From Selaginella moellendorffii (lineage: Eukaryota > Plantae > Lycopodiophyta): 64,000 nucleotides of DNA. This document shows positions 27,501 to 48,134 of this stretch, in pieces. The DNA lies in assembly GCF_000143415.4 (NCBI RefSeq), contig NW_003314265.1:3840443-3904442 (forward strand), in the 5' to 3' direction. Numbering within the stretch: position 1 is the first letter of the stretch; the number at the start of each line of letters is the position of its first letter. The position numbers were made by a program, and so were the translations under genes. The notes under the pieces were generated by a model. The model did not search any database and was not told where the DNA came from. It was given only the letters and a program-made list of their open reading frames with translations.

Positions 27501-30500
27501 GTAACTCATTGCTCATGTTCACCATATGCAATCAAGAGTCCCTATCTTGATGCATGTTGGAGATGATGGTCTTACAATGGTGAGTTGTGGGATGGATAGC
27601 GGTGAAGCGCTAAACCATTTTGTCTAAGCTTACTATTGGAAGACTTGAGTTATAATGCTCAATTCTTTTCCGAGGAACCTTGCTATTGCTCCTTAAGTAG
27701 CTTGGTGTTGGATTAGTTTTGAGTTTGGTCGGAAAGAAAGTGGCACAAGCTTGTTCGTGTTGTGAACAAAAGTTAGTGGTGTTAAGTGTTGTAAGTCTTT
27801 ATTGGTGAAGTGTGGCATTTTATGTTGCATTTTGTCGAGTCGAGTTGACACTTGATACTCACATAAACCTTTGAAATAATGACATTAGCATTGCTCGTGG
27901 TGTTGCTCAATTGATGATCAAGTCATTGTGATTTTTATATCATATCCATGTGATAATGAGCAATGTGTTTACGAAGTTGCTTGGTTAAATGATGATCAAC
28001 CCCAAAGTGGTTGATGGTGAAGCTAGTCTACTTGCATGTAGTAGCATGTAGTAGCTTCGACTGGATTCTCAATAGTGATTCATTATGCTAAGCTTAAGTT
28101 GGTTCCTTGTTCCTTGAGGGTTTGCCCATGAGGTGTTGGAAAAGGGTTGTAGCATTCATTTGTTATAGCTTGTTGGTTTATCCGTTAACACTTGGAGTAG
28201 ATTGTTGGATGGAGAAGGTGTGTAGTTGAGGCGTTGACATCACTAGCACTTGTGTTAGTGAATGTGGCATTGTTATTTCGAGTGATGAGGATTTTCCTTA
28301 GAGCTTGATTTTCTATTCATTTTTCTTGTTAGTGTTTTGGCTTCACGTTGGATCTTGAAGGTGATTGACAAATAGTGTTAGTGCAATATGGATATCCGAA
28401 GATATGGTCTTCGTGATCAAACCTTGGATGTTCACTTTGCATTTTTGCGGATATTGGAGTTGAATGTCAGAAGTATGGGCAAAAAGATGTTCGAAGCTTA
28501 AGCATACTATGGGTCATGAGAATCGGTGTTGAAGTGAACATATGTGAAGTTGTTAGTAGGAGGAAGTTGGTTGAGTCTTGAAAGTTTGTATTCCTGGACT
28601 GAGAGTCATTCTTTCTCTAGGATAGAAAATTTTCCACAAATTTTGTTAGGCTTTTCCAATGGCTGATCTGTTGATCACTTTGTCCAAAAATCATTCCGTT
28701 TTCGTAAGCTGATACAAACTAGTGAAGGGGTTGGAGTTGACTTTGGTTAGCTTAAACCTTAGTAGGTAGTTGTATGATGCGACCCGAAAGGGATGCTGAC
28801 TTTTGGGGCTAAGGCAATTGAGTTGAATAAAGTCTAGAGTTGGTGTAGAAAAGTGGCCGTTGCACTTTTCTAGAAAGGTGACCCTTGTGCCTTTCTTTTG
28901 TAGCATTATGCTTGGTGGCAGGTTGCACCTTGCATTTCGTTAGACTCTATGAGAGTAGTGAGTTCTCACTGATCTTGACTTGGTCTTGGTAGCCTTGTGC
29001 CTTGGCTGAGGATGGTGATGTCCAACTTAGTTGTTTGAGGTTGAGATGTTAGTACCCATACTATAGCTTTGTCTATGAGGAGGTTGTGTACTGATATGAG
29101 TTCATCTCATGATCTTCACTTTAGTTTCGACTGAGTGTTGATCATGTATAGCTAGCCTCTTCTAAGGCATGCTCAGAGCTGTTGGCTAAATGCATTGGTG
29201 AGCTTATTGTGGTTGAGTTGGAGTCAAGTGGTCATTTAGTTTGTGTTTGTCCATGAACCTTTATCTCGACCTGGGGTATCACATTTATGTTGGACATGTA
29301 TATGACTCGATGGCATGAGTTTAGTGTTTGGGTCTTGTAGAGACAAGTTGAAGAGTGGCTGTTAGTTGCTTTGCGACTAGTGATTGCTTGTAGACTTCGT
29401 TGAGGACTGTGGACACTTGCTTCGTTCGATGATGATTTAGCAGTGATGGGCTTGCTTTACCGGATGGTGTTGCGGAGGATCGTGTCGTTAGACTTACATG
29501 GGTTTTCCATGTTGACATTTCGACTCTACCTCTATCAATATCATTTGGTTGTATTTAGTCCATGGTGTTAGATTTCATTGAGTCTTGGAAGTGGTGATTC
29601 ACTCCTAGAGGAAGTGTTATCTGTAACTGAGTTTTGCTGAAAGATTGGTCTCGGATACTGTGTAATGTATCTTCGGTTTAGGTTAGCTTGGTTGCTAGAG
29701 AGCTTTGAGTGGTGATTCACTCTTGCTTTCTTCTAGCTTGTTATGATGTTGATGGCATTAAAGTGATGCCTTGTCGTTGATATTATTGGTATTGAGATTT
29801 GAGTGAAATGAGATGTCTCTCCTTAGAATTGATATTGAGTTTCATTGGTCTCGATAAAGATAGTGTTGATGATTTGGCTACGGCTTTATGTTATTGACAT
29901 TCGTGCATTTGCTAGTTAGCAACTGTATTGATGTTCAAACAAGCTGAGTGGCAAGTTTGGGTTAGTTGTGTTCTAGACAAGATTAATTAGTAGAGGTTGA
30001 GCTTTAGCTTTTCCTTGAAAAGTGATTTAGTTGTGGACTATGCTAACTCTATGAGAGGAAGAGTTAGTGATTGGTATTGACGTGATTGAATCCTTGTTGG
30101 ATTTCAGTTGGGATATATCGATCATTGATGATTCTTCTTATGCTTGTTATGAAGTGAGTTACATCTTACTATAGATGGATTCATGGAGGATCATTTAGTG
30201 ATCATTTGTTGAGCATAGCTCCATTGTGCTTAGGTTTTAAATTGATGCAGATATGCTCTTCATTATCTCTAGCATTATGAAGTTTAGCTTATGTATATGT
30301 TGAAAAGGATATTGTGGGTCGCACCATGATTTCTTTTTTAGCATTAAAGTTAGTTCATGCAAGATTTGTGATCATTGTTAGGCAAGACTTGGCTATAGGC
30401 TTCTTCGAGCTTTTGGTTCTTTGAGTTTTCATGCTCATTATTCCATTTGTTAAAAGTTGTTGGGGAAGGCATTCTGACTCATAGCTTCGATATTGAAGTT

Positions 30501-32974
30501 AGTATTTTGCATTTGGCAATCATTGGTGATGATTGACTATCATCTAAGATAGTTGATTATCCTTGTCAAAAGGTTTTGCTTGATTATTGTTGATATCGAA
30601 TAATTCGCTATTCTTCGGGATAGTGGATTCTTTCTTCGATAATGATTATGCATTTTTTTATTGATGGGATGGTTGATGATCTTTCATGATGGTTAGTTGT
30701 TCTCTTTGATGGCTTATGGCTTTTCGCAATACCACATGTTCCTTGTGGTTTGCTTTGGATTGGTCTGTTGGGTTTGAGACATCAAAAGGATGTTGCTAAC
30801 ACTTGCTTAGGCAACTTGAGTTCCTTGGTGTTGTTGGCTGGGATCTATTTGGATTGGCTAGTGTGATAGTTGGCATAAATGGGTGTTTGTTGGTCTTACC
30901 GCATTCATTCTGTTCTGTTGATTATTGCTCGAGTTAGTTCTGATAGGTTGGGATGTTATTTCCTTCGGGTGATACATTCGCAAGCATTGTGCTTGTCAAT
31001 CAATGATACTTTGTGTTCTTTGAGTTATCTTTGGTAAGTTATTTGGCATACTATCTGCCATCTTCGATAGTTAAGTTTCATCATTGAGTTTCCTTGATGA
31101 TGCATAGGCTATTGAATTTTGTTGGATAAGTGAATCCTATGTTTACCAATTATGATGATCTTGGTGGTTCCTATATGCTCATACTAGTTTATCGGATGAT
31201 AACTTATTTAGAATACTTTTGTATTCTAATCTATGCTTTATTCATTGATAATTAAGTCTCTAAGATATCATTGTTTATGACTTTGATATTGTCCATCTAT
31301 TGATCTTTGAGTTTGGGCCAGTATAGGTAGACTGGCTTCGGCACTTCGTGTGCATGTTGAAATCTCTAGTCATGGGGTAGCTACTGTCGACTGGTCACAT
31401 AACCCGCCTCTTTGTCGATGTTCCTTATTCCGTTGAACGGGCGTGACCGTGTAAACAACTCTAACTGCCTGTTTACAGTAGTCTATCTAAACCTTACCGA
31501 CGGGTTTGGTTTCTTTGCTTAGGAGGGTTGGGGCCTCTGGCTTCTCTCTCTATGTCCCTGCGGGCAGGGGCATATCACACTTTTGTAGCTGGGTGACACC
31601 CAGAGCAGCAAGGGTGGCTGACTCCGTTGGTCATTTCCTTGTCGGCGACGGCCGGAAGGTGTCTGAGCTGGTAGCGCATCCGCGTTAGACAAAGAGGTTA
31701 CCCCTAACTCATTTAAGTTGGTGCATTTCTCACATAGTGTGAGTACCGTGAACTTTTTCTGGAGTTGTTTCCTTGGCGGTATTCTAGACTCGAGTGTGCA
31801 TCGACGAGGACGTCGATCTTCCCAAGGGGGGGAGAGTGTCGCGCATGTGACTTCGGGTATCGAAAGTTACCTGTCAACCTGTCCTTACGGACACTCTTAC
31901 CTTACTGCCACAATGGCAAGAGGTCGGTACTGCTGGTTCCCTTTATTGGCCCCTCTTGTTCAAGTGTTAGTAAACTGGACTTTGCATCTGTACTTGGCCG
32001 GATGAGCATAAGGACGGAATTCCTAAGTGTCTATTTTGCCAAGCATACTTGGCCCGGCTTTTTAGTTCTCTTTTGCTCTGTCTTGCACTGGCTTGGCAAG
32101 AACTCTCGCGTATTGAGACTAGTCCCTCAATATCGCCGGATGATAGCTTACCGTGTCTGCCAAACACCCTCGCTATCATGCCCTTTGTGTTAGTCTCATT
32201 TCGGTCCCAAATGCTATTTATGGAAAGTGTCCAGATTTGCTCATTTGGCATATCTACGGAATGTAGAGATCGTCCTGAACACAATGGTGTTCGTCCCATG
32301 CCCAAATTCGCAATCTAAGGACATTCCATATTTAGTAAGTTTCGAGCTTGTCCCAGAGACTAACTCCTGATACTAAGGGAGGCTTGGGGTGAAAGCCCAA
32401 AGCGTGTGTTCCTCAAGGGGGGGGGGGGGGGCTGTGGGGGGTCCAAATGTATAGTAGGGATAGTGGGTAGGTCGGGCATGGCCGACTAACCTGAGGCATA
32501 GTCTAGCTCCCGCTTGCGTGCCTGTCTTTGTTCTGCGTCCGGCTTGGGTCTAAACCCAAGTTCCATTCCATGCTAGTTGGTGGAATACCCATATCCTCAC
32601 GTTAGGCCACCGGTATGCCGAAATAGCGCCAGACTCCGTTTGGCTCCGTTTTGCGTGCTGGTCCTGGCATTGGGATGCTGGTTGCTCCAGGACTGTTCCA
32701 AGTCGTTCCGGGCCCCTGTCCCTTCACTCCTTGGGATTTATGCTCGGGAGTTGCTCCGTGGTTCGGTTTCGTCACTCCTTGGCTCCATGCTTGGGAGTTT
32801 GGCACCGTTCCCTCGTTCAGTGGCCCAAGGCCCTGAACTTCGGGTTCCTATGGACACGTGGCATGTGACACGTGGCATCTGTCACGTGGCACAAAGAGGG
32901 TTTAGGTTCTGCTTCGTGGTGTTATCCTATGGTAAATCACCATAGGATAAAGGGTCAAAACCACGTGCGCTACA
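24558..32974 (+). mobile_element. Non-autonomous LTR retroelement (LTRs 24558-25703 and 31837-32974)
   Basis: TG...CA LTRs of ~1.14 kb; PBS TGGTATCAAAG (tRNA-iMet-like) right after the 5' LTR; polypurine tract AAGGGGGGGAGAG before the 3' LTR; no long internal ORF. Confidence 0.9.
25773..26918 (+). mobile_element. Solo LTR of the same family nested inside the element
   Basis: Full TG...CA copy flanked by 5-bp TSD CATAC (25768-25772 and 26919-26923). Confidence 0.92.
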
Positions 32975-33044: not shown

Positions 33045-33435
33045 GTCAAGATGGAATCTGAGGAGTTTGAGATAGACCCAAGAAGGGTCTGAAATGGACC
33101 GAGAAGGAGTCCAAGATGAAGTCCAAGATGAACCCAAGATGAACTTGAGATGGAGTCCGAGATGGAACCCGAGATGGAATCTGAGATGGACTCGAGATGA
33201 AGTCTAAGATGGACCCGAGATAAAGTCCGAGATAGACCCAAGATGAAGTCTGAGATGGACTTGAGATGGAGTCTGAGATGGAGTCCAAAAAGGACCCGAG
33301 ATGGAGTCCAAGGTTAAGATCGAGACCGAGACCAAGTCCCATACTGAGATCGAGATTGAGTCCAAGTCCAAGTTCTAGTCTGAGTTCAAGTCCGAGTCCA
33401 AGTCTGAGTTCGAGTCCGAGTCCGATTCTGAGTAT
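33045..33435. repeat. Degenerate tandem repeats (GAGATGGAGTCC-like 12-mers then 6-mers)
   Basis: Visible periodicity; explains low-complexity ORFs in the track. Confidence 0.75.
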
Positions 33436-35081
33436 GAGGGTGAAAGCCCAAAGCATTCATCTCTCAGACCCTAAGAGGTTTGATGAGCTCCAAAAGTATA
33501 ATAAAGGGAGGACTCTAGTGGAGCTAGTTTGGCCAAGAAAGGCCAGTATGACCAAGAAAGGCTATACCCATATGTTAGGTGATGATATAACTATTGAGGA
33601 ATCCAAGGCTAGAGTGAATATAGACAAACAAGCGGGGTAGTTTGGTGAAATGTTCAAGAACTAACTTTAGCTCCTTCGGGAGATCAAATGGTCGATGCTC
33701 TCAATCCAAGTATGGGTGGCACTACTACTTGGATACTTGGCATGGTTCAACAAAACCTCGTTTTAGCCCCATGGCTAAGGCACCCAAAGGCAGAAGGTGG
33801 GGAGAGTACCCATAAAGCTCGCATAAGGCCATAGTGTTTTGAAATGTTATCCCAAAGTCCTAAACTATAGAAAGGAAGAGGAACAATCCTCTAATGTAAT
33901 AACCAAAGATATAGTCACATGGTGAAGAAATCCTAGAGGATAGTGGGACTTAGTGGTTAAGCCTTTAGGCCTTGACCCAGTGGCAGTGTTGGCAAGCACA
34001 ATCATAAATAAGGGGATGGTCCAAAGTTGAGTTGAGCTCATGAGTTGAGCTCAATTCAACACAAGTCAACTCAAGTCAACATAGTCAATAAGAAATATTA
34101 CAAAGGAGATCTAAATTGAACAAATGAAGGTTCTAGCAAACTTTAAAATATTAAAATACGTAAATATCTAAGTTAAAAGTTTCTATAAGATTGAATTGTT
34201 TAAAAAAGACAAAGTTCATGAGAACCTATCTTTTATAAAACTATATTATTTTATTATGACAACTGTTACAGCTGTCATATTTGATTTGACTACTTAATAT
34301 TTTGAATACTTTTACAGCTGTAGATACTATTCCTTCATTCAAAAGAGTTTTTAGGGTTCTTGAGAAGATGGGAAGCAAGGAAAATACAAGATCTGTGAGT
34401 AAGAGTTGTAGTGCAAAGGAATGTGAGAATGTTAATTTTGTTTCACTACCACAATCTCCATATTACACTCCTGGTCCTTATTACCTATCTGGGAATGTGG
34501 AGACCACTATCACGATTGATAAAAATGCTCCTGTTACTTCTGAAACAACAGTCCAGAGCAAGAGAAATGAAGAAATGAACAGCACAGCGGAAAGCACCAA
34601 GAAATCTACTCCATAAAACTTTCTATGACATTTGTAATTTACATATTAATTCATATTAAAAACTCTATTGCTTGCCTATATCGCAATGATAAGACCAAGG
34701 TATATTTTGCAGTGAATCCTCATTAAAAGTTTTTGGGAATTGTTTGTAAATAATGATAAAAGAAATCAAAATCTTTCGAAAGACTCAAAAGTAATATCAC
34801 ATCAAAGAATCAACTTTATCTACACTTCCAAGACTAAAAGGCAATCTCACATGAGAGAATGGTAGCGTGCCAACGTGCTCTACCACTATAATGTGGTCTA
34901 TATTTCCTTGCAATTTATTTCCGTAGACATTTGGCATGTGTAGAAAAGAATATATGTGTAGCAAAGTAGGATTCATCATAATGATAGAGCATGTGTATAC
35001 ACGATAATCTAAAATTCTAGAAGCTCTTATGTTTACAAGAAAGCTATGATTATGAAGCCCCATTTCCAAGACTGACATTTA

Positions 35082-35219
35082 AAGAATTTGAGTATTGTCA
35101 GTGTCATAATAAATAAACCTCATTCCCAAGAATCTGAGTAATGTCAGTGTCATAATAAATAAACCTCGTTCCCAAGAATCTGAGTATTGTCAGTGTCATA
35201 ATAAATAAACCGCATTCCC
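35082..35219. repeat. 3 x 46-bp tandem repeat inside the TIR element
   Basis: AAGAATCTGAGTATTGTCAGTGTCATAATAAATAAACCTCGTTCCC units starting 35082, 35128, 35174. Confidence 0.95.
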
Positions 35220-35311
35220 AAGACTAAAACTTAGTATATAAACTATCTAGAAAAGTTATAGTCATTATAGGTTTTTTGTTCTCCTTGAGCTCCTTAGAAG
35301 TTTATATTGAA

Positions 35312-35857
35312 ATGGCTCAAAGGAGACCCATTGCTAATCGTACTTGGCCCCCCAGCATTTCATATCAATCTCCACCTCCATCCCCAAGTTCTACCAACAT
35401 TCCACCTTCACCTCTACGTAACAATCCTTTTTCTGCTGAGGGCTCTAGTGAAGCTGAATTAGAGCTCCCTATATGTGAAATTCCGGATCTTGCTACTAGA
35501 GAGGGATTGCCTTTAGCGCTTCAAGAGCAATGCCACATGTTTTTGCAAGATCTTGCTCCTGACATGGCAGGACTACTTGAAAGCACAGAACGCTATTACA
35601 TTCGGTGTCCAATATGCTACTTTTTCTTGGACAAGACAAATGGCTCTATGGGTTTACAAACTTTTCTTGAGCATTGTAAGAATTGCCCAACGGCAGGTCT
35701 GGAAAATGTGCACATGTGGATGTACAATAGATTCAAGAATGAGTTACAGACACATACCCACTATCGCTTCATGGTGAGGAACAACATCCCCTTGGGAAAC
35801 ACTACATTGGCTAGTGCAAAATATGGGGTTTTTAGGCCACCCTATAGTGGAATGTAA
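35312..35857 (+). CDS. Small zinc-finger protein (CPxC..H..H, zf-XS-like), left-end cargo ORF
   Basis: Pro/Ser-rich N-terminus then RCPICYFF..GLQTFLEHCKNC..HMWMYNRFKNELQTHTHY; paralogous to 44905-45357. Confidence 0.6.
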   Translation: MAQRRPIANRTWPPSISYQSPPPSPSSTNIPPSPLRNNPFSAEGSSEAELELPICEIPDLATREGLPLALQEQCHMFLQDLAPDMAGLLESTERYYIRCPICYFFLDKTNGSMGLQTFLEHCKNCPTAGLENVHMWMYNRFKNELQTHTHYRFMVRNNIPLGNTTLASAKYGVFRPPYSGM

Positions 35858-36080
35858 GATCTAGAATTACTTTACTATACTATAGTATTGTCACTATTAA
35901 AAGAAAAAATATAATAAAATGATATTAGTTATAGGTAACATACCTTGTTCTAGAAGGTGCTATCATATCATATACAATTGTTTACAAAATGTTGAAGGAG
36001 GAGATGGCAACACACAAACGCTACAAAATGATGGTGACAGGTGAGAATGATAATCTATAATTATGGTATCTGACACTAAC

Positions 36081-36170
36081 ACTGACATCTGACAATTTTA
36101 TTGACATCTGACAATTTTACTGACATCTGACAATTTTACTGACATCTGACACTTTCACTGACATCTAACA
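36081..36170. repeat. ~4.5 x 19-bp tandem repeat inside the TIR element
   Basis: ACTGACATCTGACAATTTT units. Confidence 0.9.
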
Positions 36171-36413
36171 TATAACAAGCTTTCCATTTTATGTAAGGAT
36201 GCAATTAACTTTCTTCTGCCTCATCATCAACATAATGATTTCTTTTATACTTCCTCCTATAGTGGTATTGTGGGGAAGATTCACCTTGCATATGTTGAGC
36301 CATGGCTTCTGCATAGTCAGGGAGACTTCGAAAGCCTCCAATTCTAGAAACTCCAGGTGATTATGATCTATAAAATAGAATGAAATATATATTGAAATTT
36401 TAATAAACATAAT

Positions 36414-39400
36414 TTACCTCCTTGAGGTTGAAGGCAACTCACGAAATCCTCTGAGCCGGCGTTTGAAGAAATGATGTTCTTCAATAGCAAACACCGACCT
36501 ACCAGAGTCACGTGCTGCCTCCACCATAGAACCACTACCTGCTGTGCAATCAATCACAATACCATCTGGTGGGCAATAGAGCTCAAGCAAGACTTGCATT
36601 GCTGATGGAGTTCGGAATCGGTACCCTGGAAACGTGTTGCGGATCTGCTCATCCACAAGGTTGGGTATGATGTTAGTGGAACTGTCGTACCCAGGCAAAA
36701 CACGTGCTGCACGTTCACTATCACGAAACCCATCATGTGTGTTTTTGCAGAAGGCATGATAGGTCCACATCATAACCTGGAAAATAAAAATGTTTAGAAA
36801 TTAGATAAAAATATAAAATACATACTCACTTTTTCAGGCTTCCCTTGGACGCCCCTTGTATCAACGCCAATAGGATCCATAATGCACCCGGAAGAGAATG
36901 ACTTGAAATGAACTTCTGCTGCGCACGTCATAAGCTCATACATCCAGTTGGGGTCATTCGGTAGGATGAAGATGACATGGCCAGCTTCGAGCATAAGTAC
37001 TTCGGACAATAGGAATGCATCGCGCAAGTGGTCAGGTGTGAGAAAGTTCCAATCCTCAACTTTCCCATCGATATCTGAAAGACCATCTGGAAAGTCGAAG
37101 AGAATGAAGTCCGCAACTGGGAGCACGGGCCTTTGTATCTTTCGGCACCAACGGTTGAACTGGCGGCGTATATCCATGTTGATGTCGTCTTCCGTGAAAG
37201 ATGTCAATAATCTACTATAAGAGCCAATGAAGATACCCACAATGCCTCGTTGTGTTATTGGGGACACAGGACGGACCTATAAAAGAGCTAAGTGAATGAA
37301 AAAAGTAATAAATAGTATGATACCGTCATATGGCGTGTTGTCGATGAGAGTTCCTCCAACTCCTCTTCACGAGCATCTCGTCGAGCTGGAATGAAATTAC
37401 TGCCAACAGTCATTGCTGCAAAAAACATATATTACCACCTTTAGTTTGTAAAATTCACTTTTGCTTACCTCGAGGTCGACGTGATATTCTGTGAACCACT
37501 TGATCATCGTTATTTACTGGTAAAACCTGATCCGGATCTTGGTTGTTTGATGGTTGAATTGGAGCCTGTTCCTGACTGTCTGGTGGTGGAACATGAACTT
37601 GATCTGGAGCTTCCTCATCCTCGTCTCCATCGTCACTTGCATTGCCATCGTTGCTAGCATTGATAATTTCCTCGCGATCTAGTGTAGAGGTCTCCTTCCC
37701 TAGGAGCTCCAACTCCCAAGGGCATTCTATCTTCCGTGCCTTTGGAACTTTCGCAAACATTGTTGGATACATTCCTCCATCTCTTACACCCTTTGCAACA
37801 AGTCGAGTGCAAACTGGTGCCTCAAATGGCATGCCTCTATATCGAAGATACCTGTAAACAATATATTTAAAAAAACAGTCTTAGAAATCATATTATACCT
37901 ATAAGCTGCACGTCGCATGAAATAAGGTTGACCATGTTGGCAATCATAAGTTGTTGTGCTTGTAGACTTCTCTGGCAGCCACCCCTCTTCGATCCCTTCC
38001 AATGACGTGTTGATGTAGGTGTCGAAAAACATGAATGTGCCATCTGGATCGTCACCAATGTGTGGTGCCAAGAACTTCTCACCTTCACTTATAGTTTGCG
38101 TGATGTAGACAGCCCTTCTCATCATGTTCTCAAATAGTTCTGGCAGTCCTTTNNNNNNNNNNNNNNNNNNNNNNNNNNNNNNNNNNNNNNNNNNNNNNNN
38201 NNNNNNNNNNNNNNNNNNNNNNNNNNNNNNNNNNNNNNNNNNNNNNNNNNNNTGCTTATATGGAAGCTTCGATTTTGCCGATATTGTAAATCATATCATC
38301 TGGAGTTTTGTTCACTGCAAAAGTAACATATGCATAATTAAAAAAAATGAAGTGTGATAAAAAACTTACATTCATGAGAAGAAATTTCGGCTATAGTCTC
38401 TAGCCACTCCTTCGGCCTGCGATTGTCTGCAATGCATACTAGTTTCTTCAACTTTGAGGACTTTGCATGCTGAATTTTGTGCTCAATTTGTACAAACTCA
38501 GCTGAGAGCTCTTCCCGACTCTTCTCCGGATATGCAAGTTCGTAAGCATCCTGCTTGACCTTCACCAAAGGCTAAAAACCAAAACAATTAAAAGAGGCTT
38601 TTATAAAATAAAAGGGAAAGACATACTTTACACCACACAGCGAGCATAAAACTGATTGGGTTGTTGAACCAAGTTGTACCGTCATTTCGAGTGCGTGAGT
38701 GCCGAACAAGTGTTGCGAGATCATCACCATAATGTTGGCGGATGTCATCCTCACTCAAGTCTGCCAAAAATCGAAGTTGCTCGATGTCATGGACAAGATT
38801 TTGTTTTTGAACAGCGAACTGCCCAAGCCTACATTTAAACACAACAAAACAAGTTAAAGTGGAGTTAGAGGTAAAATTATAAAACTTACGCATTGATCTT
38901 TTGGCAGGCCAAGATAAGTCTGTTGACATCCAAAGGTCCCCTCGCGTAGACATGGCCGACTGGAACGTTGATATGGTAGACAGGATCATCGCGAAAATGA
39001 TCGTCGATACACTTCATCCAAGCTCCATATCGGTGGTTACCATCAATAATTTGGAACATTGTCCCCGCAAGCTGTCGAGTCTCAGGATGTCTGATAAGCA
39101 TGTCATCAAATTCTAGGGACTTCCTCCTCCAAATAGGATCCCAGCTATTCACAATCTCGGGTGTGACAGTAATGATCTCCGTTGTTCCTGGCTTGCAAAA
39201 AGAGACTAGAAACATACCGATATTTGTTGCAAGGCCATTCTGTTTGAACAAGTTGTATATATCCGGGTTGACATACTTGGATGCTGTGCGGACAAGGTTC
39301 GTCTGCTGCAAACGGCAAAGGGGGATTTCTCTGATCAAGTCACAAGGGCCTGGCCACTTGAGCGCCTCAAGTGTTTGGTGAACTGCTTTTTCCCTTGTCC

Positions 39401-40250
39401 GCATAACAGTCTCTTGGAAGCGCTTGTCCACCACGTTGTCAGGAAGGTCTGCAACTCTTTCAGCTCCAGGTTGTTCCTCAGGTTCCCTATCGTGAACACC
39501 ACTAGATTGCCCAACTTCAGGGATTTGCGTTGGTGGTGGTGGCGGTGGTGGCGGGGGCAAAGGCAATAGTGGCAGTGGTGGTGGCAATGGTGGTGGTGGC
39601 GGTGGCGGCGGGGGCAGAGGCAATAGTGGTAGTGGTGGTGGCAATGGTGGTGGTGGCGGTGGCGATGGAGGTGGTGGAGGTGGTGATGGAGGTGGTGGAG
39701 GTGGCGATGGCGGTGGTGGAGGTGGTGATGGTGGAGGTGATGGTGGTGGAGGTGGTGATGGTGGAGGTGATGGTGGTGGAGGTGGTGAATCTCTATCTAA
39801 ATGTGTCTCTGTTGTGCCAATGGACATGTCGATTGTGATGTCATCGTCAGTGCCAAATTGAACTTCTCGTGTCTTCTTGGCTCCANNNNNNNNNNNNNNN
39901 NNNNNNNNNNNNNNNNNNNNNNNNNNNNNNNNNNNNNNNNNNNNNNNNNNNNNNNNNNNNNNNNNNNNNNNNNNNNNNNNNNNNNNNNNNNNNNNNNNNN
40001 NNNNNNNNNNNNNNNNNNNNNNNNNNNNNNNNNNNNNNNNNNNNNNNNNNNNNNNNNNNNNNNNNNNNNNNNNNNNNNNNNNNNNNNNNNNNNNNNNNNN
40101 NNNNNNNNNNNNNNNNNNNNNNNNNNNNNNNNNNNNNNNNNNNNNNNNNNNNNNNNNNNNNNNNNNNNNNNNNNNNNNNNNNNNNNNNNNNNNNNNNNNN
40201 NNNNNNNNNNNNNNNNNAGCAATCAAATCGAAACTCACCCTTGGCGGCAT
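36414..40250 (-). CDS. Multi-exon Pro-rich + ParB/Srx-like + beta-class N6A/N4C DNA methyltransferase-fold protein
   Basis: Exons joined by short GT-AG introns (approx. 40250-38890, 38828-38627, 38571-38370, 38314-37899, 37851-37469, 37415-37324, 37276-36830, 36776-36414); IIDGNHRY; DFILFDFPDG (motif IV position); FRTP..LLELYCPPDGIVIDCTAGSGSMVEAARDSGRSVFAIE (motifs X-I-II); two N-gaps inside. Confidence 0.75.
38153..38252. other. Assembly gap (N run)
   Basis: 100 N. Confidence 1.
39886..40217. other. Assembly gap (N run)
   Basis: N run. Confidence 1.
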
Positions 40251-40284
40251 CTTTCCTCCCTCGATTTCTTGATCATGCTAGATT

Positions 40285-40575
40285 TCTTGTGCGCTCAATC
40301 TCTCCTTCTCGCGCGCTCAATCTCTCCTGCTTGCGCACTCAATCTCTCCCGCTCGCGCGCTCAAACTCTCCCGCTCGCGCACTCAATCTCTCGATCTCTT
40401 GCGCGCTCAATCTCTCGATCTCTTGCGCGCTCAATCTCTCGATCTCTTGCACACTCAATCTCTCGATCTCTTGCACGCTCAATCGCTCGATCTCCTTCGC
40501 GCTCAATCGCTCGATCTCCTTCGCGCTCAATCCCTCGATCTCCTTCGCGCTCAATCTCTCGATCTCTCGTGCGCT
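40285..40575. repeat. ~12 x 22-24-bp tandem array upstream of the ParB-MTase gene
   Basis: GCGCGCTCAATCTCTCGATCTCTT units; the first four are 22 bp, the rest 24 bp. Confidence 0.95.
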
Positions 40576-41729
40576 CCACTCACGATGCGAACAGTAACCT
40601 AATCTTGGTGGCTACCCTAACCCTAATCCTGACGGCTGCCCTAACCCTAACCTATCTCTCATCCTGGCCGTTCATTCCGAATAACCTAAATCTCAACCAT
40701 CACAATATCTTTGATCTTATTTTATCTTATCATTATTATTATATGTAAATTATGCTTCTTTATTTTGTATATTTTAATGATGGTATAACTAGCACCTATC
40801 AACATTTCTGTTATTAGAGATATGATATTATATTTTACAAATTATCTAGAAAGGATGCATTCTCATCACTATTTTGTACATATTTTGGAATCGTTACAAG
40901 AACTTCAAAGAGTATAAATAAGGCACGTTAAAATATGTTGTACTATATCCATCTATGAATGGATGAATCCGCATCCAGAAATTTATTTTGTACTGTATTA
41001 GATCCTAAACAATAGGCACGTGCTTTAAATGTCATTGAGCAGTGTTCACAATTATGGATAAAACTTGAGTTGTACTACGAATCAAATCTGTTATTGAAGA
41101 ATAAGATTTGACAAGATTTATTATCATCTACCACTTAAAATTTGACAACTTGACATATCACACGTGCTGATAGTTAGATTGGATCTCTTGGTTTAACACG
41201 TTATAGCAGAATGTCATTACTGGTATCATTATTAACTATCAAACTTCACGTGCTGAAAATCTTTCCTTGGATCTATGTGTATACATGCATCAGACATCAT
41301 AATAGATGACAGTAATATTAATACTGTCACACTTACACATGTTAAATTTGCTATAGAATTTAAATTCATTTTGTACGTTGTCTTCTTATTACTCTATTTA
41401 AATTTCAATTATGTTTCACTATAGATTTTTACAAGTAGCATAAAGAGAGAGAACTCCAAAACCTATTGAGAAGGATGGAGAGGTTTCTTCTTCATTTTCG
41501 AGATCACCCACCTCTTTCATTCTCTCAGAGTATTGTTTCTGAAAGTTTTTTATGTCGGCGTTTTGATCTTCGTCTTGGCTCTATTTCTTTAGAGGCTGTG
41601 ATCCGCAACGACACCGGTATAGTTGCATACTCGGAGTTTCTTCTTTCTGGTGTGGGTGAGGGTGGACAACAATGGGATTTACAAAATTCCAAGTCGAAGG
41701 AGATTCGAGTGTTTGGATCTCCAGTCAAA

Positions 41730-44700
41730 ATGCCAAAATGCGCTCCAGCGAAAGTGAATGTGAAGCAAGAGTCAGTCGTTATCCTCTCGTCCTCTTCTAG
41801 TTCAAGTGAAGATGTCATGCTAGTGTCGGCGCCAAATTCACTAGCTCCAGCTCCAACTTCAGCAATATTCAAAGCCGTTAGCAATGCTTTCCAATTTTCA
41901 CGCATCTCAATCAACATGCACTTGTTTTTGTATAGGCTTGTGAGTGAGCTTCCATCCTCCTACAACGGCAACATTTTCTTCGAGCTACCACCTCTTGTCA
42001 GCAGCACAGGTTCCAAACGGAAGGGGATGGAAACCAAGCAGGATGTCCACAATTGGTGCAAGATCAAGACCACACACTTTCAACATTTTGAAGGCACAGT
42101 GTCTATAGTTCATTGTGGCGGGCATTTAGATTGTGTGGATGAAGCATGCAATCGAGACCGCTCTAGAAACTCTATATTTTTCGAAGGGTCTGCAGTCAAT
42201 CCTCCAGCCTGTGACACCATTGCTGTTGGATTCAAATGTCGATTCTGCAAAAATGCTCCTCTATGTCGTGCTATCTGCGAGGCCAAGATGTACTACTTTC
42301 TTCCACGGGATGGAGTGGCTGGAAGAGCTGCAGTGCATGTTGGCACACATATGCATCCAATGCAGGAAGGGATACAAAGGAGTTCTCTCAACCGTTTCAA
42401 AGATGCTGTACAGGAAGAGACTATGAGAAACTCATCTGCAACTCCGAAGCATATTCAGAAGACCGTCCTCAAGGATTTTATCGCAAATACCTTACTCAAT
42501 CCAGGTTGCCAAAAGACTCAACTAAACGAGGCTAGCTTGCGGGACTTACTACGAGGAGTACAACCTGCTACTAGCCTAAGGAGGTACATCCATTATTTTT
42601 CATACGTTATAATAATAATTTTTTCTTACATTATATTGTTTAGGATAAAATCTTGGATGTGTGAATCTCGAGAGGGGAAGTTGCAATCAAAAATTGACTC
42701 CATCCTTGAATTGAAACGGACCTGTCCATACGAGTTCATCCACAGAAGTTTGTTTCCAGACCAAGTTGTGAATGAGCAAGAGCGCCCCTTCGTCTTCAAA
42801 ATGTCTACCATGGGCCCTGCCTCTGGTGTAGATCTTGTCTCCCGAATGGACATGTTTGGGTCCAGTGACCTTGCAAATGCATGGGTACATTTTGACCATA
42901 TGGAGCGTGTATCCGGTTGGACAACCATGGGAGCTCATGTGTACGATCCAAGGTAATTTTTATTCTCATTATATTGAAATTGTTATAATATTTATGTTTT
43001 CATAGGCTACGTTGTAACTTAACAATTGCGACAGCAGAGTTTAAAGTACAAGACCAGACAGCACAGGAAATATTTTGGAAGTCCCTCTCTGATATTGTCC
43101 TAAAGCGGATTGGTAAGCCTGCAAACTTTCGTGGTTTCATGGCAGATGGGGCTGGTGCAAACTGGAATGGTATCCGAGCAGTTTTTGGGAATGGTCAACC
43201 ATTGGAAGGTCGTGAGAGGACTTGTGAGTTCCATTGGGCTCAAAGCCTAAACCAGCACTACCACCTTATCAAGCCAGAGTTTCAATCAATATTTAAGGAG
43301 TTGTGCAAACAATGGCAGGTTGCACCTTCTGAAGAAGAGCATGAGGCAAAAGCAAACGAGATTCGAATGTGGTGGCGTGAAGATGGCCATACAGACGTAA
43401 GTTGCCTACCACAACTTGAGTCATGGTTAGGATGGTGGGAAGTTAGGATGTTCCAATGGGGACATCACTCTTTTCAGGTTGGTTTATATTTTTTCTTCTC
43501 CTTTTATTACCTTTTAATATTGCCTTTTCCATTAGGATCAACCACTTGAGGACCTCGCATACACCCCAACTGTGAATCTCTCCGAAAGTAAGCATTGGAG
43601 TTGGCGTTCCTCTGAGGCAGGGAAAGGGAAGATGAGTCTATACGAAGCCTGTCTATCAGATTTGATACGTGCTATAGAGCAATCTTCAAAAGCACTGGCA
43701 TTCGAGGAAGGAAGATACATGGGAACAGGGCCTTCTGTTGAGATGTTACATGATAGGATGAAGAGAAAATTAACTCCACCCGCCCGAACAGTGGCAACTG
43801 CAGTTGAGGAAGTGGTCCATGGCACATCTATGGAGTACACTCCCCGAGCTTCTATTGGTGATATGAAGACTGTCCGCTCAAAGCGTCGTTTTTCCTTTGC
43901 TAGGGAAGATGTTGGTACGGACCTTGGAGCAAAAAGCTCCCACAGGCCTGATGTCGAGTACCATTCTGCTCCAAGACACCGCTCTCGGACTGAGCCACCT
44001 CAAGTGGCTGATGAAGAGAGTGCATCGCAACAGGTTGAAATTGCTTATCGTAACGTGGAGCCGAAGCAATGGGCAATCCGACGTGTGCCAGCAAAATCAA
44101 ATGTAAGGTGTGTGGGGATGCTTCCGAGGGGCAAGTGTTGGGCTTGGATTCGTGGTGAAAAATCTGCTTCTGTTCCAGCCCCATGTTTCTATGGGGAACG
44201 AAAGCAAGCAGGATTTTCAAGATGGTGCTGGCTATATTGTTGCAACACCGACGCCAACCATACGAAGCGGCTTGAAGACACTATAGTGACTAAACCTGAT
44301 GCAGTACCTAAAGAATGGCCAGTTGTTAATGGGGTCGCGCTCACCTCGGATGAGATTGAAAACCTTGAGAAATCTGGTTTTAATCTTGAGAGGAGAGTTG
44401 GAGACATGAGTGACAGGAGCAGGACTATTCCTACAGAGATGCACAGGAGGCCAGCACGAAAAGGTAAAGCAGTTAAATTTATTGGTACCGTCTCCAAGCA
44501 GAAGCAAGGTAAAATAAACTTGGCTCAAACACTTGAGTGTGAGATTCTCTCTACGAAGTACATCACTGCGCTTGCAAAGGAGTACATAGTCAAAACAGAA
44601 GGTGGAGAGTACACAATTGCCATTCACGACTTTCCTTCTTGCACATGTCTAGACTTTACGAAGCGCGAGGAACATGGGAAGGCATATGCTCCTTGCAAGC

Positions 44701-44813
44701 ATATGTACTACATCTTCATCAACATCTTGCACCAGGATCCTAAAGTGGATATTCATATACACCAAGCAAGCCTTACTATTGCTGAGTTGCAGAAAACTTT
44801 TGGAGCTAATTAG
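41730..44813 (+). CDS. MULE-type DDE transposase with N-terminal Cys/His (GCM/WRKY-like) domain and C-terminal SWIM finger
   Basis: HFDHMERV (D1), FMADGAGANWNGIRAVF (D2), CEFHW (CxxH), TVNLSESKH (E), CTCLDF...CKH (SWIM); introns 42953-43005 and 43478-43535 keep frame; start may be as far up as 41475. Confidence 0.85.
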
Positions 44814-44904
44814 ATTTCTCCAACACTATCGATGTTTATTCTCTATCAATAAAACTTATTATACTTTATATAATTAATACAAATGTGCTTTTTCATTTCA
44901 CTTT

Positions 44905-45357
44905 TCATTTTATATGCTTCCGAGTGTTCTTCTCGCAATACTGCCCATAGTACTCGTGTGTCTCCATTTCTGTCTTTACCATCTCAAAAAAGATTTCATG
45001 GTAGTCTTTCGGGTGCGTGATGTTACAGTGTGTCGCAAGAGCATATATACCATCATACTGATCATTGCCATTGTTTCCACCAGACGCTAGAAAACATATG
45101 GGGCACTTCTTGAAAGTGGCAGAACTGCACTTTTCTAAAACAAGTAAGAGGGCATTCTTTTTCACCCAATTTGTTGCACCCTCTGTCATTGCATTTATCT
45201 CCAACTCATGATCACTATCCTCACTATCCTCTCTTTCATTCTCTTGTGTGATTTGGTTATGCTGTGCAATGGGATAGTTATTGCATCTCCTAGCCCTTGA
45301 GCCCTGGGAAGAAAGATTGTGAGAGTTAAAATTACCAACACTAGAACCCATAGACAT
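44905..45357 (-). CDS. Small zinc-finger protein (zf-XS-like), right-end cargo ORF
   Basis: KCPICFLASGGNNGNDQYDGIYALATHCNITHPKDYHEIFFEMVKTEMETHEYY; paralogous to 35312-35857. Confidence 0.6.
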   Translation of the reverse strand: MSMGSSVGNFNSHNLSSQGSRARRCNNYPIAQHNQITQENEREDSEDSDHELEINAMTEGATNWVKKNALLLVLEKCSSATFKKCPICFLASGGNNGNDQYDGIYALATHCNITHPKDYHEIFFEMVKTEMETHEYYGQYCEKNTRKHIK

Positions 45358-48134
45358 TTGTGGGTGTATTTCCCTTTTTTCGAATGAGAGTGTGAATGAA
45401 GATCTATAAATTCTAGACAGTATGCTACGACAAACCCCTCAAGAATGTATTCTACAAAGAACCAAGTCTTTCTTTTATATGCAATAAGCTTACATCAACG
45501 GTTATTTTTTTTCCTTTCAAACGGTTATATGGTTTCACATAGAATCTTATTTTAAATTTAATAATTTTTTAATTCTGACAAACCTAACATTTACTAGCCA
45601 GAAAGCATAGAGTACAAATTTAAAGAAGTGACAAGAATACTCTTTTTTCAAACATTTTATTTTATGTTCTAACAAATGTCCCTATCATTGCATGTAGTAA
45701 ATATTTAAATTATTAGAACAAAATGTGTTCTTTAGAACATTTTTATCTATATAATATATAGAGAGTTATTAAATTATTAGGTTCGCCATAACCTTAAAAT
45801 TTTAAAATTTATAATGTTTGTACTAAATTACAATTGAAAATTGAGCTCAACTCGTGAGCTCAACTCTTCAACTCGTGAGCTCAAGTATGGTCCGCGCCCA
45901 TAAATAAAGAGGGACTTACTGGGGATGGTAGAAGGGACATTGGGGAAAGGTGTTCCTTATATCTCTGTGCATCTTAAGGGTGCCAAAGTCTGGTCAAGGG
46001 ATGATCACTCATGGACGGATGGCCCAATCTTTGGGAGACAAAACTGTGATGTAAGTGGTGTTGGACCACTAGTGTGACAAAAGTGAATGGGCATGGCTTT
46101 AGTGTAATGAGCTGATATGTCAATGGTCCCTTTGGGTGTTAATCATGAGATCAGACACATGGAGCATTTGGACCAAGTGTAAAGGTTGAATAGCATAGAT
46201 GCCATTCTCAAGGCTAGTAAGTCCCCAAATTCAAAATAAGATTTATGAAAGTTGTGAGTGAGACTCCTTTATGTGGTCAAAGATGTGGTTAAGTGACTAA
46301 AGTAGAATGGAAAATTTAATTGCTTACAATTTAGTATTGGAATTGTTCCTTAATTCGACTTTTATTGGTGATCAAGTATATCACCACTTGTTTTGGTATT
46401 AGAAGGTCCTAAATGTGGGCCTACCCTCAAGGAGTAACATGTCGAAAGGGCATGACTCCCCACCTTAGTTCATAAGTGAACATAGTGACAATATGGTGGG
46501 TAGAAAAGGGCTAATTTGGGAACAACTTTGGGATTTTAGCAAATTGGCAGATAAGGTTGTAATAAATAAATATAGTTGGGATCACGGGAATGATGGAAAC
46601 TCCTAGACGATAAAGGAGTCATAAAGTTATCCTCATATGGTTAAGGATGGTTTTTAAGAATTTGAGGCTAAAATTAATGACCATGGGAGGTTAAATATGA
46701 ATAAAGACATAAGTCTTTGAAATAGTAGTGAGGTTACCTCTAATAAATGCTGGAATAAACCCAAAAGAGTTGGGGGTGTACTTAGAGGATGAGTCGGTAT
46801 TCTCATTATATAGACAGATAGTCTTAAGGGGCAAAGGTAACCCACAGGGAACGGAAAATAATTAAGTGTCAAAGTAATATTTACTGTAGATAGTCTTTGT
46901 AAGTAAAACATGAATACAAAAAGTTGTATTCCGGTGAATTGACACATAAAAAATAAGTATGAGGCTAAAACTTTATGGGTCATTGAATTAGAAAAGTTTA
47001 AAGAGCTAAATGACTCAAGTGGAATCAAGGAATGGTCTTAAAGGACTGATAGAAGCATTTGAACGAATGTGTGTTACATCCTATGAAGAACGGGAAAGAT
47101 CATAAGATTAAGTATGAGAACAATGGGTATCTCATTAATGGTAGAATGTGCCATACTAAACTTTGGCATAGAGTTATGTATGAACACCATAGTGTAATAC
47201 TAACTAATAGTTGGTATGAGAAATGATTGCTTTGGTCTTAGCAAAGACTTAAACATGAATGGAAAGTATTATGAAAGTAGGTTTGTGGAGGTGATGGGGT
47301 GAAGACCCCAAATGTCTCAAGAGATAAGGCCTTGAAGTCAAGTCGGTTGGTTCACGAGAACCTTTTGTTAAAGGAATCCCAATGGAAATGAGATTAGTAT
47401 AGCCTAAACTAGAAGGCATGCAATTCAAGTGTGTGGACCTAAATAATGATAAAAGTGTGAAAGCATTAGCAATGAGTTCTAGGACTTGACGATTATGAGG
47501 CAATTAAATAAAATATATGGCATAATTTAGTAGATTGGTAGAAGTTAACTTCTTAAGACTTCTTATTAGGATAAAAAAGGTTAGATATATCCCGCAGGGG
47601 GGTAAATTATTTATGTTGAGATATAGTAAGTCAATGTTATAAAGAGAAATGTTCATTGTTAAAGAAGGCCATTATTATAACACTTAAACACTCTAAAACA
47701 CCAAGAAGTGGTATTTGATATCATAAAGGCTTTAGATAAGGCCTAAGGGACTAAATCCCTAATGAATAATAGATAAAAGGTGCTATCTAGTATCCAAGGT
47801 TACGAAGGTAGGAAAAATCTATATATCTGAATTAAACAAAGCTAAAAAGGGATTTTGGCATAATTAGCAATAGGTATAAAGAGGCACATGCAAAATGACA
47901 TTAATCCTAGTGTGTGGGATTACAAGGTGAGTAAACGAAGATTATGTCGACAAAAATGCAAAAAGGGAAAAATTGTCACAAGAATTGGGAAGATTTTTGT
48001 AGATCGGTTGTTGAAGATTGCACACTACATTCTAACTGTGGAAACAGTGAATGCGAAGCAAGGAGCAAAACTCTATTTTTATGAAGTCGTGGTCTTCCCA
48101 AGTAGATTAAAACATTTGAATATGAGAATGTGAT

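What the first reader, a model, noticed from the sequence alone, without database searches (positions are those of the whole stretch)
34012..45899. Mutator-like transposon carrying a four-gene, symmetric module with a putative DNA methyltransferase (candidate undescribed TE epigenetic system)
Seen: TIRs and an 8-9 bp TSD enclose [zf ORF ->][<- ParB-MTase gene][transposase ->][<- zf ORF], plus three internal tandem arrays. The transposase and MTase gene are divergent from a shared ~1.2-1.5 kb region, and all reading frames look intact apart from N-gaps. Established: some plant MULEs (Arabidopsis VANDAL) carry sequence-specific anti-silencing genes acting on their own repeats, and bacterial-type amino-methyltransferases have been co-opted in eukaryotes (bdelloid N4CMT, Marchantia 4mC writers). 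Inference: this element may mark or shield its own DNA with 6mA/4mC and/or interfere with host RNA silencing. I do not know of this exact cargo being described for a MULE.
Basis: partly seen in the sequence, partly recalled or inferred. Interest (0 to 1): 0.92.

Follow-up and report, generated by a model that had tools for sequence, protein, structure and literature searches.

The report
Selaginella Mutator transposon with ParB-methylase-like gene
This is a nearly intact 11.9-kb cut-and-paste (Mutator-type) transposon of the spikemoss Selaginella moellendorffii that carries, beside its transposase, an expressed gene joining a ParB-like domain to a DNA-methylase-like domain; such cargo was reported in algal transposons in 2025, and here the methylase catalytic motif is not the normal one.

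Summary
The anatomy is real. The element spans 34012-45898, with a perfect 9-bp (or 8-bp) target duplication, imperfect terminal inverted repeats, four genes in the stated order and three non-coding tandem arrays.

- **Transposase:** 970 aa, four exons, intact. A fold search places it in the Mutator/IS256 superfamily, although Pfam does not recognise it.
- **Accessory gene:** about 1030 aa in nine exons. RNA contigs show it spliced.
- **Assembly gaps:** gap 1 is bridged by RNA and DNA contigs. Gap 2 lies in intron 1.
- **Damage:** this copy has one extra C at 38278 that breaks the accessory gene's frame.
- **ParB part:** the predicted structure has the ParB/sulfiredoxin fold.
- **Methylase part:** it keeps the AdoMet-binding motif. 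Where DPPY should be, it and four homologues read D/N-hydrophobic-P-x-G, so self-marking with 6mA/4mC is unsupported.
- **Conservation:** the same transposase plus ParB/methylase-like pair, divergent around family-specific repeats, occurs in a second Selaginella family, the liverwort Riccia and a metagenome contig.
- **Zinc-finger ORFs:** they have no detectable relatives.

The 2025 algal papers describe similar cargo, and this scan already found the family on other DNA of this genome. I rate it a new member of a known kind, of moderate interest.

The parts
34003..34011 (.). left target-site duplication CATAAATAA
   Evidence: identical 9-mer at 45899-45907
34012..34056 (+). left terminal inverted repeat with two TGAGCTCA palindromes
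35082..35223 (.). tandem array 1, 46 nt x 3, contains TGTCAGTGTCA
35312..35857 (+). small Cys/His ORF (zfL, 181 aa from ATG), orphan
   Evidence: 88% aa identity in L002, where it carries 3 stops
36068..36170 (.). tandem array 2, 19 nt x 5, TGACATCTGACA (the TGACA motif inverted relative to array 1)
36414..40250 (-). ParB/Srx-like + MTase-like accessory gene, about 1030 aa. Exons: 40250-40239; (32 nt inside gap 2)+39885-38890; 38828-38627; 38571-38370; 38314-37899 (through gap 1); 37851-37469; 37415-37324; 37276-36830; 36776-36414
   Evidence: spliced RNA contigs of run X16; junction check and translation. Intron 37898-37852 is predicted only
36414..37276 (-). MTase-like domain (last two exons): DFPD at the motif IV position, DCTAGSGS as motif I
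38153..38252 (.). assembly gap 1, inside exon 5; bridged by RNA and DNA contigs
38278..38278 (-). extra C relative to most copies and to the mRNA; frameshift followed by a stop
   Evidence: (table 4)
38892..39383 (-). ParB/sulfiredoxin-fold domain with DGNHR motif
   Evidence: AF2 pLDDT 94.5; Foldseek top 42 hits are all ParB/Noc/KorB/Srx; VIA Z 7.7
39531..39787 (-). proline-rich low-complexity coding repeat
39886..40217 (.). assembly gap 2, within intron 1 (also holds the first 32 nt of exon 2)
   Evidence: (tables 5, 5c)
40281..40576 (.). 12 tandem 22-24-nt units with near-palindrome TTGCGCGCTCAA, in the shared divergent region
41730..44813 (+). Mutator-superfamily transposase, 970 aa. Exons 41730-42583, 42644-42952, 43006-43477, 43536-44813. 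D369, D435, C461xxH464, E562; SWIM-like CxCx16CxH at residue 914
44905..45357 (-). small Cys/His ORF (zfR, 150 aa), orphan
   Evidence: 96% aa identity and open in L002
45839..45898 (-). right terminal inverted repeat with three TGAGCTCA palindromes
45899..45907 (.). right target-site duplication CATAAATAA

Best explanation
Shown: this is an autonomous-type Mutator-superfamily DNA transposon of Selaginella moellendorffii. It belongs to a transposon lineage, present in lycophytes and in the liverwort Riccia (ferns hold homologues of the accessory protein, whose link to a transposase was not checked), whose conserved core is two divergently placed genes. One is a DDE transposase. The other is a nuclear-targeted protein of about 1000 aa with a ParB/sulfiredoxin-fold domain and a C-terminal beta-class methyltransferase-like domain. 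The region between the genes holds repeated motifs that differ from family to family and are mostly palindromic. This family has in addition two small Cys/His ORFs, one at each end.

Inferred: the accessory protein recognises the element's own repeats, meaning the 24-nt array and perhaps the related TGAGCTCA palindromes in the terminal repeats. It would act there as an element-specific cofactor that regulates transposition or expression, or shields the element from silencing. Its methylase-like domain more likely serves as an AdoMet-binding or structural module than as a canonical N6A/N4C DNA methyltransferase, because the catalytic DPPY-type motif is replaced by D-hydrophobic-P-x-G in all homologues examined.

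This copy is young, with a perfect target duplication and an open transposase, but its accessory gene carries a 1-nt frameshift.
For: - Ends and target duplication.
- Species: window exons are 96-98% identical to XP_024522738.1 of S. moellendorffii.
- Transposase: 970 aa, uninterrupted after removing three GT-AG introns, with D/D/CxxH/E and a SWIM pattern.
- Transposase superfamily: fold search of a family homologue returns FAR1/FHY3/FRS, ZSWIM1/3/9 and IS256-family transposases as nearly all of the top 25 hits.
- Accessory gene: spliced mRNA contigs cover most of its exons; intron 37898-37852 and its flanks lack RNA cover.
- ParB/Srx fold.
- Methylase-like domain: PF01555 partial match; language-model neighbours all N6_N4_Mtase; the only PDB hits of the family profile are DpnA, CcrM and M.MboIIA.
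- Motif IV variants.
- The same divergent gene pair in L006, L009 (Riccia) and L001.
- Family-specific repeats or palindromes between the genes in three of these loci (window, L006, L009); L001 has only weak ones.
- Second copy with a different flank.
- Published algal parallels.
Against: - No DNA-binding HTH domain was demonstrated. The structural match covers only the N-terminal NTP-binding ParB/Srx domain.
- Binding to the arrays is pure inference. The array unit here is only a 10/12 palindrome.
- Pfam does not recognise the transposase, and the transposase model had low confidence (pLDDT 54).
- Loss of catalysis is inferred from motifs only. D, P and G of the motif are conserved, and one fern homologue keeps an aromatic residue (DVPF).
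- No RNA library assembled the transposase or right-hand ORF region.
Confidence: 0.55

Rival explanations
1. One reading: the accessory protein is an active amino-DNA-methyltransferase that writes 6mA or 4mC on the element's own DNA. It would be targeted by the ParB-like domain to the arrays and would mark or shield the element from host silencing.
For: - AdoMet-binding motif I is intact, and the domain order is that of beta-class enzymes.
- D, P and G of the motif IV region are conserved across lycophyte, fern and liverwort homologues.
- The gene is expressed.
- A land-plant beta-class enzyme does write 4mC in Marchantia (bioRxiv 10.1101/2021.02.12.428880).
- Authors of the algal papers propose this function.
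Against: - The tetrapeptide is DFPD, NLPD, DLPT, DFPT or DVPF rather than (D/N/S)PP(Y/F/W). The base-stacking aromatic residue is absent in four of five homologues.
- The Pfam score is below the family's threshold (25.2 against 26.7 bits) and covers only 46 residues.
- The N-terminal half is not recognised by Pfam or by language-model features.
Confidence: 0.22
2. Pack-MULE-like capture: the ParB/MTase-like gene and the small ORFs are host or foreign gene fragments picked up by one transposon family, without function for the element.
For: The two small ORFs are confined to this family and have no relatives. The left one carries stops in the second copy.
Against: - The ParB/MTase-like gene is linked to the same transposase clade, in the same divergent layout, in families only 27-55% identical and in different plant lineages.
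- It is a full-length, spliced gene of about 1030 aa.
- dN/dS between copies is 0.35-0.45 for its exons, though from small counts.
Confidence: 0.05
3. Assembly artefact: the four genes are brought together by misjoined contigs at the two N gaps.
For: Two gaps lie inside the accessory gene. The second copy (L002) is itself rearranged and gapped at the corresponding places.
Against: - RNA and DNA contigs from independent runs cross gap 1.
- One spliced RNA contig links both sides of gap 2 in frame.
- L002 is colinear over all four genes.
Confidence: 0.02

Closest known systems
Sola1-1_Ec32 of Ectocarpus (Genome Biol 2025, PMC12477816)
   Same: The accessory gene sits on the strand opposite the transposase. 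It encodes a protein of about 1100 aa with a ParB-like domain and an N4C/N6A-type DNA methyltransferase domain, proposed to bind and modify its own element.
   Different: It has a different transposase superfamily (Sola1 against Mutator) and a different host (brown alga against lycophyte). Sequence homology to the algal protein could not be tested here, and the state of its catalytic motif is unknown to me.
Plavaka accessory genes PAG2/PAG3 of Bostrychia, and giant Plavaka/Mutator elements of Chondrus (Petroll et al. 2025, bioRxiv 10.1101/2025.02.11.637652)
   Same: The transposons carry ParB-like and N6-methylase-like domains, and tandem arrays of inverted repeats lie next to the ParB gene. 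The paper reports homologues in Mutator elements.
   Different: In Plavaka, the ParB domain is fused to a 2OG oxygenase and the methylase to a SET domain, in separate genes. Here ParB and the methylase-like domain are one protein, and the hosts are land plants.
Phage and plasmid ParB-N6_N4 methyltransferase fusions (PMC12704722; PMC4738411)
   Same: The domain combination and order are the same. The AdoMet-binding region is 31-34% identical to phage DNA methyltransferases.
   Different: The phage enzymes checked have canonical DPPY and pass Pfam thresholds. The plant protein does neither, is about 1000 aa long, contains introns and has an NLS-like start.
VANDAL21/VANC anti-silencing system of Arabidopsis MULEs (from my own knowledge, not checked in the library)
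   Same: A Mutator-like element encodes an extra protein thought to act on the element's own short repeats.
   Different: There is no sequence or domain relationship, and the function here is untested.
MULE-derived FAR1/FHY3 and ZSWIM proteins, and IS256 transposases
   Same: They are the best structural matches of the transposase family. The DDE core with a CxxH motif and the C-terminal SWIM pattern are shared.
   Different: The Pfam MULE, FAR1 and Transposase_mut models do not detect this clade.

Membership tests
Mutator (MULE) superfamily transposon | 8-11 bp target-site duplication flanking terminal inverted repeats | tested here: met
   A 9-bp CATAAATAA on both sides; the terminal repeats are imperfect at the tips and 96% complementary over 28 nt.
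Mutator (MULE) superfamily transposon | DDE transposase of the MuDR/IS256 type with a C/D-x2-H motif after the second D | tested here: met
   D369, D435, C461xxH464 and E562. Nearly all of the top 25 fold hits are FAR1/FRS, ZSWIM or IS256-family proteins, but the model is weak (pLDDT 54) and TM scores are 0.2-0.3.
Mutator (MULE) superfamily transposon | Match to Pfam MULE (PF10551) or Transposase_mut | tested here: not met
   No hit even at E<=10 for any exon.
Mutator (MULE) superfamily transposon | C-terminal SWIM zinc finger | tested here: inconclusive
   The CxCx16CxH pattern is present at residue 914, but PF04434 scores only E=0.09.
Beta-class N6A/N4C DNA methyltransferase (PF01555) | AdoMet-binding motif I (FxGxG type) | tested here: met
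   DCTAGSGS. It aligns to phage methyltransferases and to DpnA/CcrM.
Beta-class N6A/N4C DNA methyltransferase (PF01555) | Catalytic motif IV (D/N/S)-P-P-(Y/F/W) | tested here: not met
   DFPD here; NLPD, DLPT, DVPF and DFPT in homologues. The position is fixed by the following W...G block, which aligns to CcrM.
Beta-class N6A/N4C DNA methyltransferase (PF01555) | Score above Pfam's gathering threshold | tested here: not met
   25.2 bits against a cut-off of 26.7, covering profile positions 171-216 only. Riccia homologues score 23.7-26.2 bits.
Beta-class N6A/N4C DNA methyltransferase (PF01555) | Methyl transfer to DNA | not testable with these tools
   Needs an enzyme assay or long-read modification calls.
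ParB/sulfiredoxin superfamily | ParB N-terminal (NTP-binding) fold | tested here: met
   AF2 pLDDT 94.5. The top 42 Foldseek hits are all from this superfamily. VIA Z 7.7, rmsd 2.8 over 96 residues against Caulobacter ParB.
ParB/sulfiredoxin superfamily | Conserved G-x-x-R / DGxHR nucleotide-binding motif | tested here: met
   DGNHR. G, N and H are nearly invariant in 47 homologues.
ParB/sulfiredoxin superfamily | HTH DNA-binding domain and parS-type site binding | not tested
   The structural alignment covers only the N-terminal domain.
ParB/sulfiredoxin superfamily | Sequence match to Pfam ParBc or to solved ParB chains | tested here: not met
   No Pfam or PDB sequence hit, even with a 47-sequence profile.
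Algal transposon ParB/methyltransferase accessory proteins | Encoded inside the element, divergent from the transposase, next to repeat arrays | tested here: met
   compared with the descriptions.
Algal transposon ParB/methyltransferase accessory proteins | Sequence homology to the algal proteins | not tested
   No algal sequence was available through the tools.
zf-XS (SGS3/IDN2) fingers, for the two small ORFs | Match to Pfam zf-XS | tested here: not met
   No such hit at E<=10, and no PDB or database relatives.

The most novel reading that the evidence does not exclude
The ParB/methylase-like protein is an active, self-targeted DNA modifier (6mA, 4mC or another AdoMet-dependent mark) with an unorthodox D-h-P-x-G catalytic loop. 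Guided by family-specific palindromes, it would give a lineage of Mutator transposons present in lycophytes and liverworts its own epigenetic identity tag, which could be tested in liverwort or lycophyte models.
Probability: 0.15. Interest if true: 0.85.

Novelty: new member of a known kind. Interest (0 to 1): 0.45.

Why it matters
Transposons that bring their own ParB-like/methylase-like protein and matching repeat arrays were only recognised in algae in 2025, and no function has been tested. This copy shows four things:
- The design exists in land plants, in a Mutator lineage shared by lycophytes and liverworts; ferns carry homologues of the accessory protein.
- The gene is spliced and expressed.
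- The repeats between the two genes change from family to family.
- The methylase catalytic motif is systematically non-canonical.

The last point shifts the likely mechanism from self-methylation towards self-recognition, and gives concrete constructs for a test. It also explains misleading database names: 'trimethylguanosine synthase' in Riccia, and a chimeric 'transmembrane protein' model in Selaginella.

Tried and rejected
- Pfam on all large ORFs and exons. Only the last MTase exon hit, below threshold; there was no MULE, ParBc or zf-XS hit.
- PDB sequence searches with the single ParB exon, the MTase N-terminal exon and both small ORFs gave nothing meaningful.
- Word-indexed protein searches with the MTase N-terminal exon and the right small ORF returned no hits within the allowed length range.
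- Language-model search of the MTase N-terminal exon gave unreliable cNMP-binding neighbours with low recognition. I disregarded it.
- hhalign of the spliced MTase domain against three phage enzymes gave 96% probability, but the N-terminal half aligned without confidence and skipped DPPY. I did not use it for motif IV.
- The AF2 model of the transposase homologue was poor (pLDDT 54). I used it only for the family identity of its hits.
- dN/dS between the window and L002 copies rests on counts too small to be decisive. L002 is a dead copy with stops in most genes.
- L002 could not resolve either gap, because it is itself gapped or rearranged there.
- I searched for small Cys/His ORFs in the paralogous loci L006 and L001 and found none.

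Full report
**Observation.** The element runs from 34012 to 45898 (11,887 bp, 41% G+C, in a roughly 50% G+C neighbourhood). The 9-mer CATAAATAA lies directly outside both ends, at 34003-34011 and 45899-45907. If the termini are read as G...C, the duplication is the 8-mer ATAAATAA. The terminal repeats are imperfect at the very tips. They then share a 28-nt stretch that is 96% complementary and built from the palindrome TGAGCTCA, which occurs twice on the left and three times on the right and nowhere else in the 64-kb window. Three non-coding tandem arrays are present: 35082-35223 (46 nt x 3), 36068-36170 (19 nt x 5) and 40281-40576 (22-24 nt x 12). Arrays 1 and 2 carry the same TGACA-type motif in opposite orientation and flank the left small ORF.

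**Gaps, tested first.** I laid Logan contigs of two DNA runs and two RNA runs on 36200-40300.
- Gap 1 (38153-38252) is crossed by an RNA contig (run X16) and a DNA contig (run X2). Loose ends give 30 bases inside the gap that continue the downstream frame. The contig length implies about 46-48 real bases rather than 100.
- Gap 2 (39886-40217) lies in intron 1. An RNA contig joins 40239 to 32 letters inside the gap and then to 39885. The intron starts with GT at 40238. ATG 40250 is then in frame, and the protein starts MPPRKRKIV..., which looks like a nuclear localisation signal.
- So neither gap is a misjoin. The same table shows that the C at 38278 is absent from the RNA contig and from about 95% of the DNA contig depth. 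With it, the window's frame runs into a stop; without it, the frame stays open.
- The claim that all frames are intact therefore fails for this gene in this copy, unless the base is an assembly error beside the gap.

**Accessory gene.** X16 contigs show introns at 38889-38829, 38626-38572, 38369-38315, 37468-37416, 37323-37277 and 36829-36777. All are GT-AG on the minus strand after allowing for two single-base polymorphisms at exon ends. One further intron (37898-37852) is predicted only. The product is about 1030 aa. In order it has an NLS-like start, a proline-rich tract, a ParB-like domain, a helical middle part, an acidic tract and a C-terminal methylase-like domain. The RNA contigs differ from the window at about 1% of positions. 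They come from a library labelled with another organism code than the genome's (organism C). Four libraries of the genome's own species hold small parts. No RNA library held 5% of the words of the transposase and right-hand ORF region.

**ParB part.** Sequence methods fail: Pfam, and PDB searched by both phmmer and a 47-sequence profile, gave nothing. An exhaustive HMMER search found 134 representative clusters. Those that carry names come from Selaginella, the ferns Adiantum capillus-veneris and A. nelumboides, and the liverwort Riccia sorocarpa. With that alignment AlphaFold gave a confident model (pLDDT 94.5).
- Its 42 best Foldseek matches are all ParB, Noc, KorB, sulfiredoxin, SbnI or PadC.
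- VIA-align gives Z 7.7 and rmsd 2.8 A over 96 residues against the CTP-binding N-domain of Caulobacter ParB.
- The motif DGNHR is nearly invariant.
- Only the N-terminal NTP-binding domain is matched. A DNA-binding HTH is not shown.

**Methylase-like part.** The last exon matches PF01555 over 46 residues around motif I (DCTAGSGS), with E=1.9e-5 and 25.2 bits against a cut-off of 26.7.
- All of its best language-model neighbours that carry a Pfam family are N6_N4_Mtase.
- It is 31-34% identical to phage DNA methyltransferases, which are themselves canonical.
- The preceding exon is not recognised by Pfam or by language-model features.
- It does have homologues in Riccia (P0153, P0154), in Adiantum (P0067, P0142) and in the Selaginella paralogue L006.
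- A profile of these sequences hits only beta-class adenine methyltransferases in the PDB: DpnA at E=0.003, CcrM at 0.19 and M.MboIIA at 0.53. The alignment places the W...hydrophobic...G block exactly where it follows DPPY in CcrM.
- At the DPPY position the five proteins read DFPD, NLPD, DLPT, DVPF and DFPT.
- The fold and AdoMet site are therefore conserved. The catalytic tetrapeptide is not, and four of the five lack the aromatic residue.

**Transposase.** Removing three GT-AG introns (60, 53 and 58 nt) gives an uninterrupted 970-aa protein. It has D369, D435, C461xxH464 and E562, and a CxCx16CxH pattern at residue 914. Pfam sees none of this apart from a weak SWIM match. Sixteen database homologues at about 30% identity carry no Pfam domain. 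A model of one homologue was poor (pLDDT 54) but has the beta-beta-beta-alpha-beta-alpha-beta order of an RNase H-like core. Nearly all of its top 25 Swiss-Prot fold hits are FAR1/FHY3/FRS, ZSWIM1/3/9 or IS256-family transposases, most at probability 0.98-1.0. Together with the target duplication, this places the element in the Mutator superfamily, in a clade that current HMMs miss.

**Is the cargo part of the element?** Yes.
- A second copy on GL377716.1 (L002, 90-96% identical) has the same four genes in the same order and a different right flank. It is truncated on the left and carries stops in most genes.
- A paralogous Selaginella family (L006; 41-55% aa identity) has the same transposase clade and a ParB/MTase-like gene placed divergently. 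So do Riccia sorocarpa chromosome CM100801.1 (L009) and a metagenome contig (L001).
- The inter-gene region carries family-specific repeats in three of these loci. Here there are twelve units containing TTGCGCGCTCAA, a 10/12 palindrome that shares the half-site CTCAA with the terminal TTGAGCTCAA. L006 has several GAGATGTCGGTTC...GAACCGACATCTC palindromes. Riccia has nine copies of ATTCCGGCGAG..CTCGCCGGAAT. L001 showed only weak palindromes.
- The two small Cys/His ORFs are weakly similar to each other (E=4e-5 in a single comparison). They are conserved in L002, absent from L006 and L001, and have no relatives or domain hits.

**Comparison with what is known.**
- The Ectocarpus study describes a 1104-aa ParB-like plus N4C/N6A-methyltransferase protein encoded opposite the transposase of a Sola1 element. 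[quoted passage not shown]
- The Bostrychia study describes Plavaka accessory genes with N6-methylase/SET and ParB/2OG-oxygenase architectures, with arrays of inverted repeats beside the ParB gene. It mentions homologues in Chondrus Plavaka and Mutator elements.
- ParB-methylase fusions are common in phages (PMC12704722).
- ParB-HTH/Dam fusions were noted in chlorophytes and chytrids (PMC4738411).
- I found no report for land plants.
- Earlier agents of this scan had already found this and sister families on other pieces of the same genome.

**Verdict.** The anatomy is confirmed, apart from one frameshift. The element is a nearly intact member of a land-plant Mutator lineage with a ParB/methylase-like accessory gene. 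The proposed self-methylation is not supported by the catalytic motif, and a role for the small ORFs in silencing has no support. I rate it a new member of a kind published in 2025, with moderate interest.

Noticed in passing
window 36421-39501 (RNA contigs of run X16): The spliced mRNA contigs, about 99% identical to this Selaginella element, come from a library labelled as another organism (code C) than the genome's species (code A). This could be a labelling difference, a very close relative, or a recently shared transposon.
   Followed up: no
L002 10001-15735 (GL377716.1): The RefSeq model XP_024522738.1, named 'uncharacterized transmembrane protein DDB_G0289901-like', is a chimera of two ParB-gene exons of a dead copy of this transposon and low-complexity sequence.
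   Followed up: partly
L009 10001-13843 (Riccia sorocarpa CM100801.1): Riccia proteins that UniRef names 'Trimethylguanosine synthase' (KAL3677308.1 and relatives) are the ParB/MTase-like accessory protein of the same transposon lineage, lying divergent from its transposase.
   Followed up: partly
L002 230-1761 and 14218-15232: Fragments of a related subfamily, 85-87% identical at the DNA level, flank the L002 copy. This suggests nested or clustered insertions of sister families.
   Followed up: no
window 23568-23828: This stretch is 71% identical to the element's left subterminal region (34098-34382). It may be a remnant or a non-autonomous relative; no TGAGCTCA motif lies nearby.
   Followed up: no
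window 33062-33433: Dense tandem repeats (6-, 12-, 23- and 46-nt units of GAGTCC/GAGATG type), with open frames on both strands, lie about 570 bp to the left of the insertion site.
   Followed up: no
window 28001-32000: Strong strand asymmetry: GC skew up to +0.31 and AT skew down to -0.28, in a stretch of 40% G+C.
   Followed up: no
L001 11450-11452: In the metagenome contig, the transposase homologue is split by a single in-frame stop into 482-aa and 104-aa ORFs.
   Followed up: no
P0115 (Adiantum capillus-veneris KAI5065344.1): This 1176-aa fern protein has the same ParB-like domain and ends in a NIF/FCP1 phosphatase domain. It matches the Sola1-type accessory gene that earlier notes of this scan describe.
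   Followed up: partly
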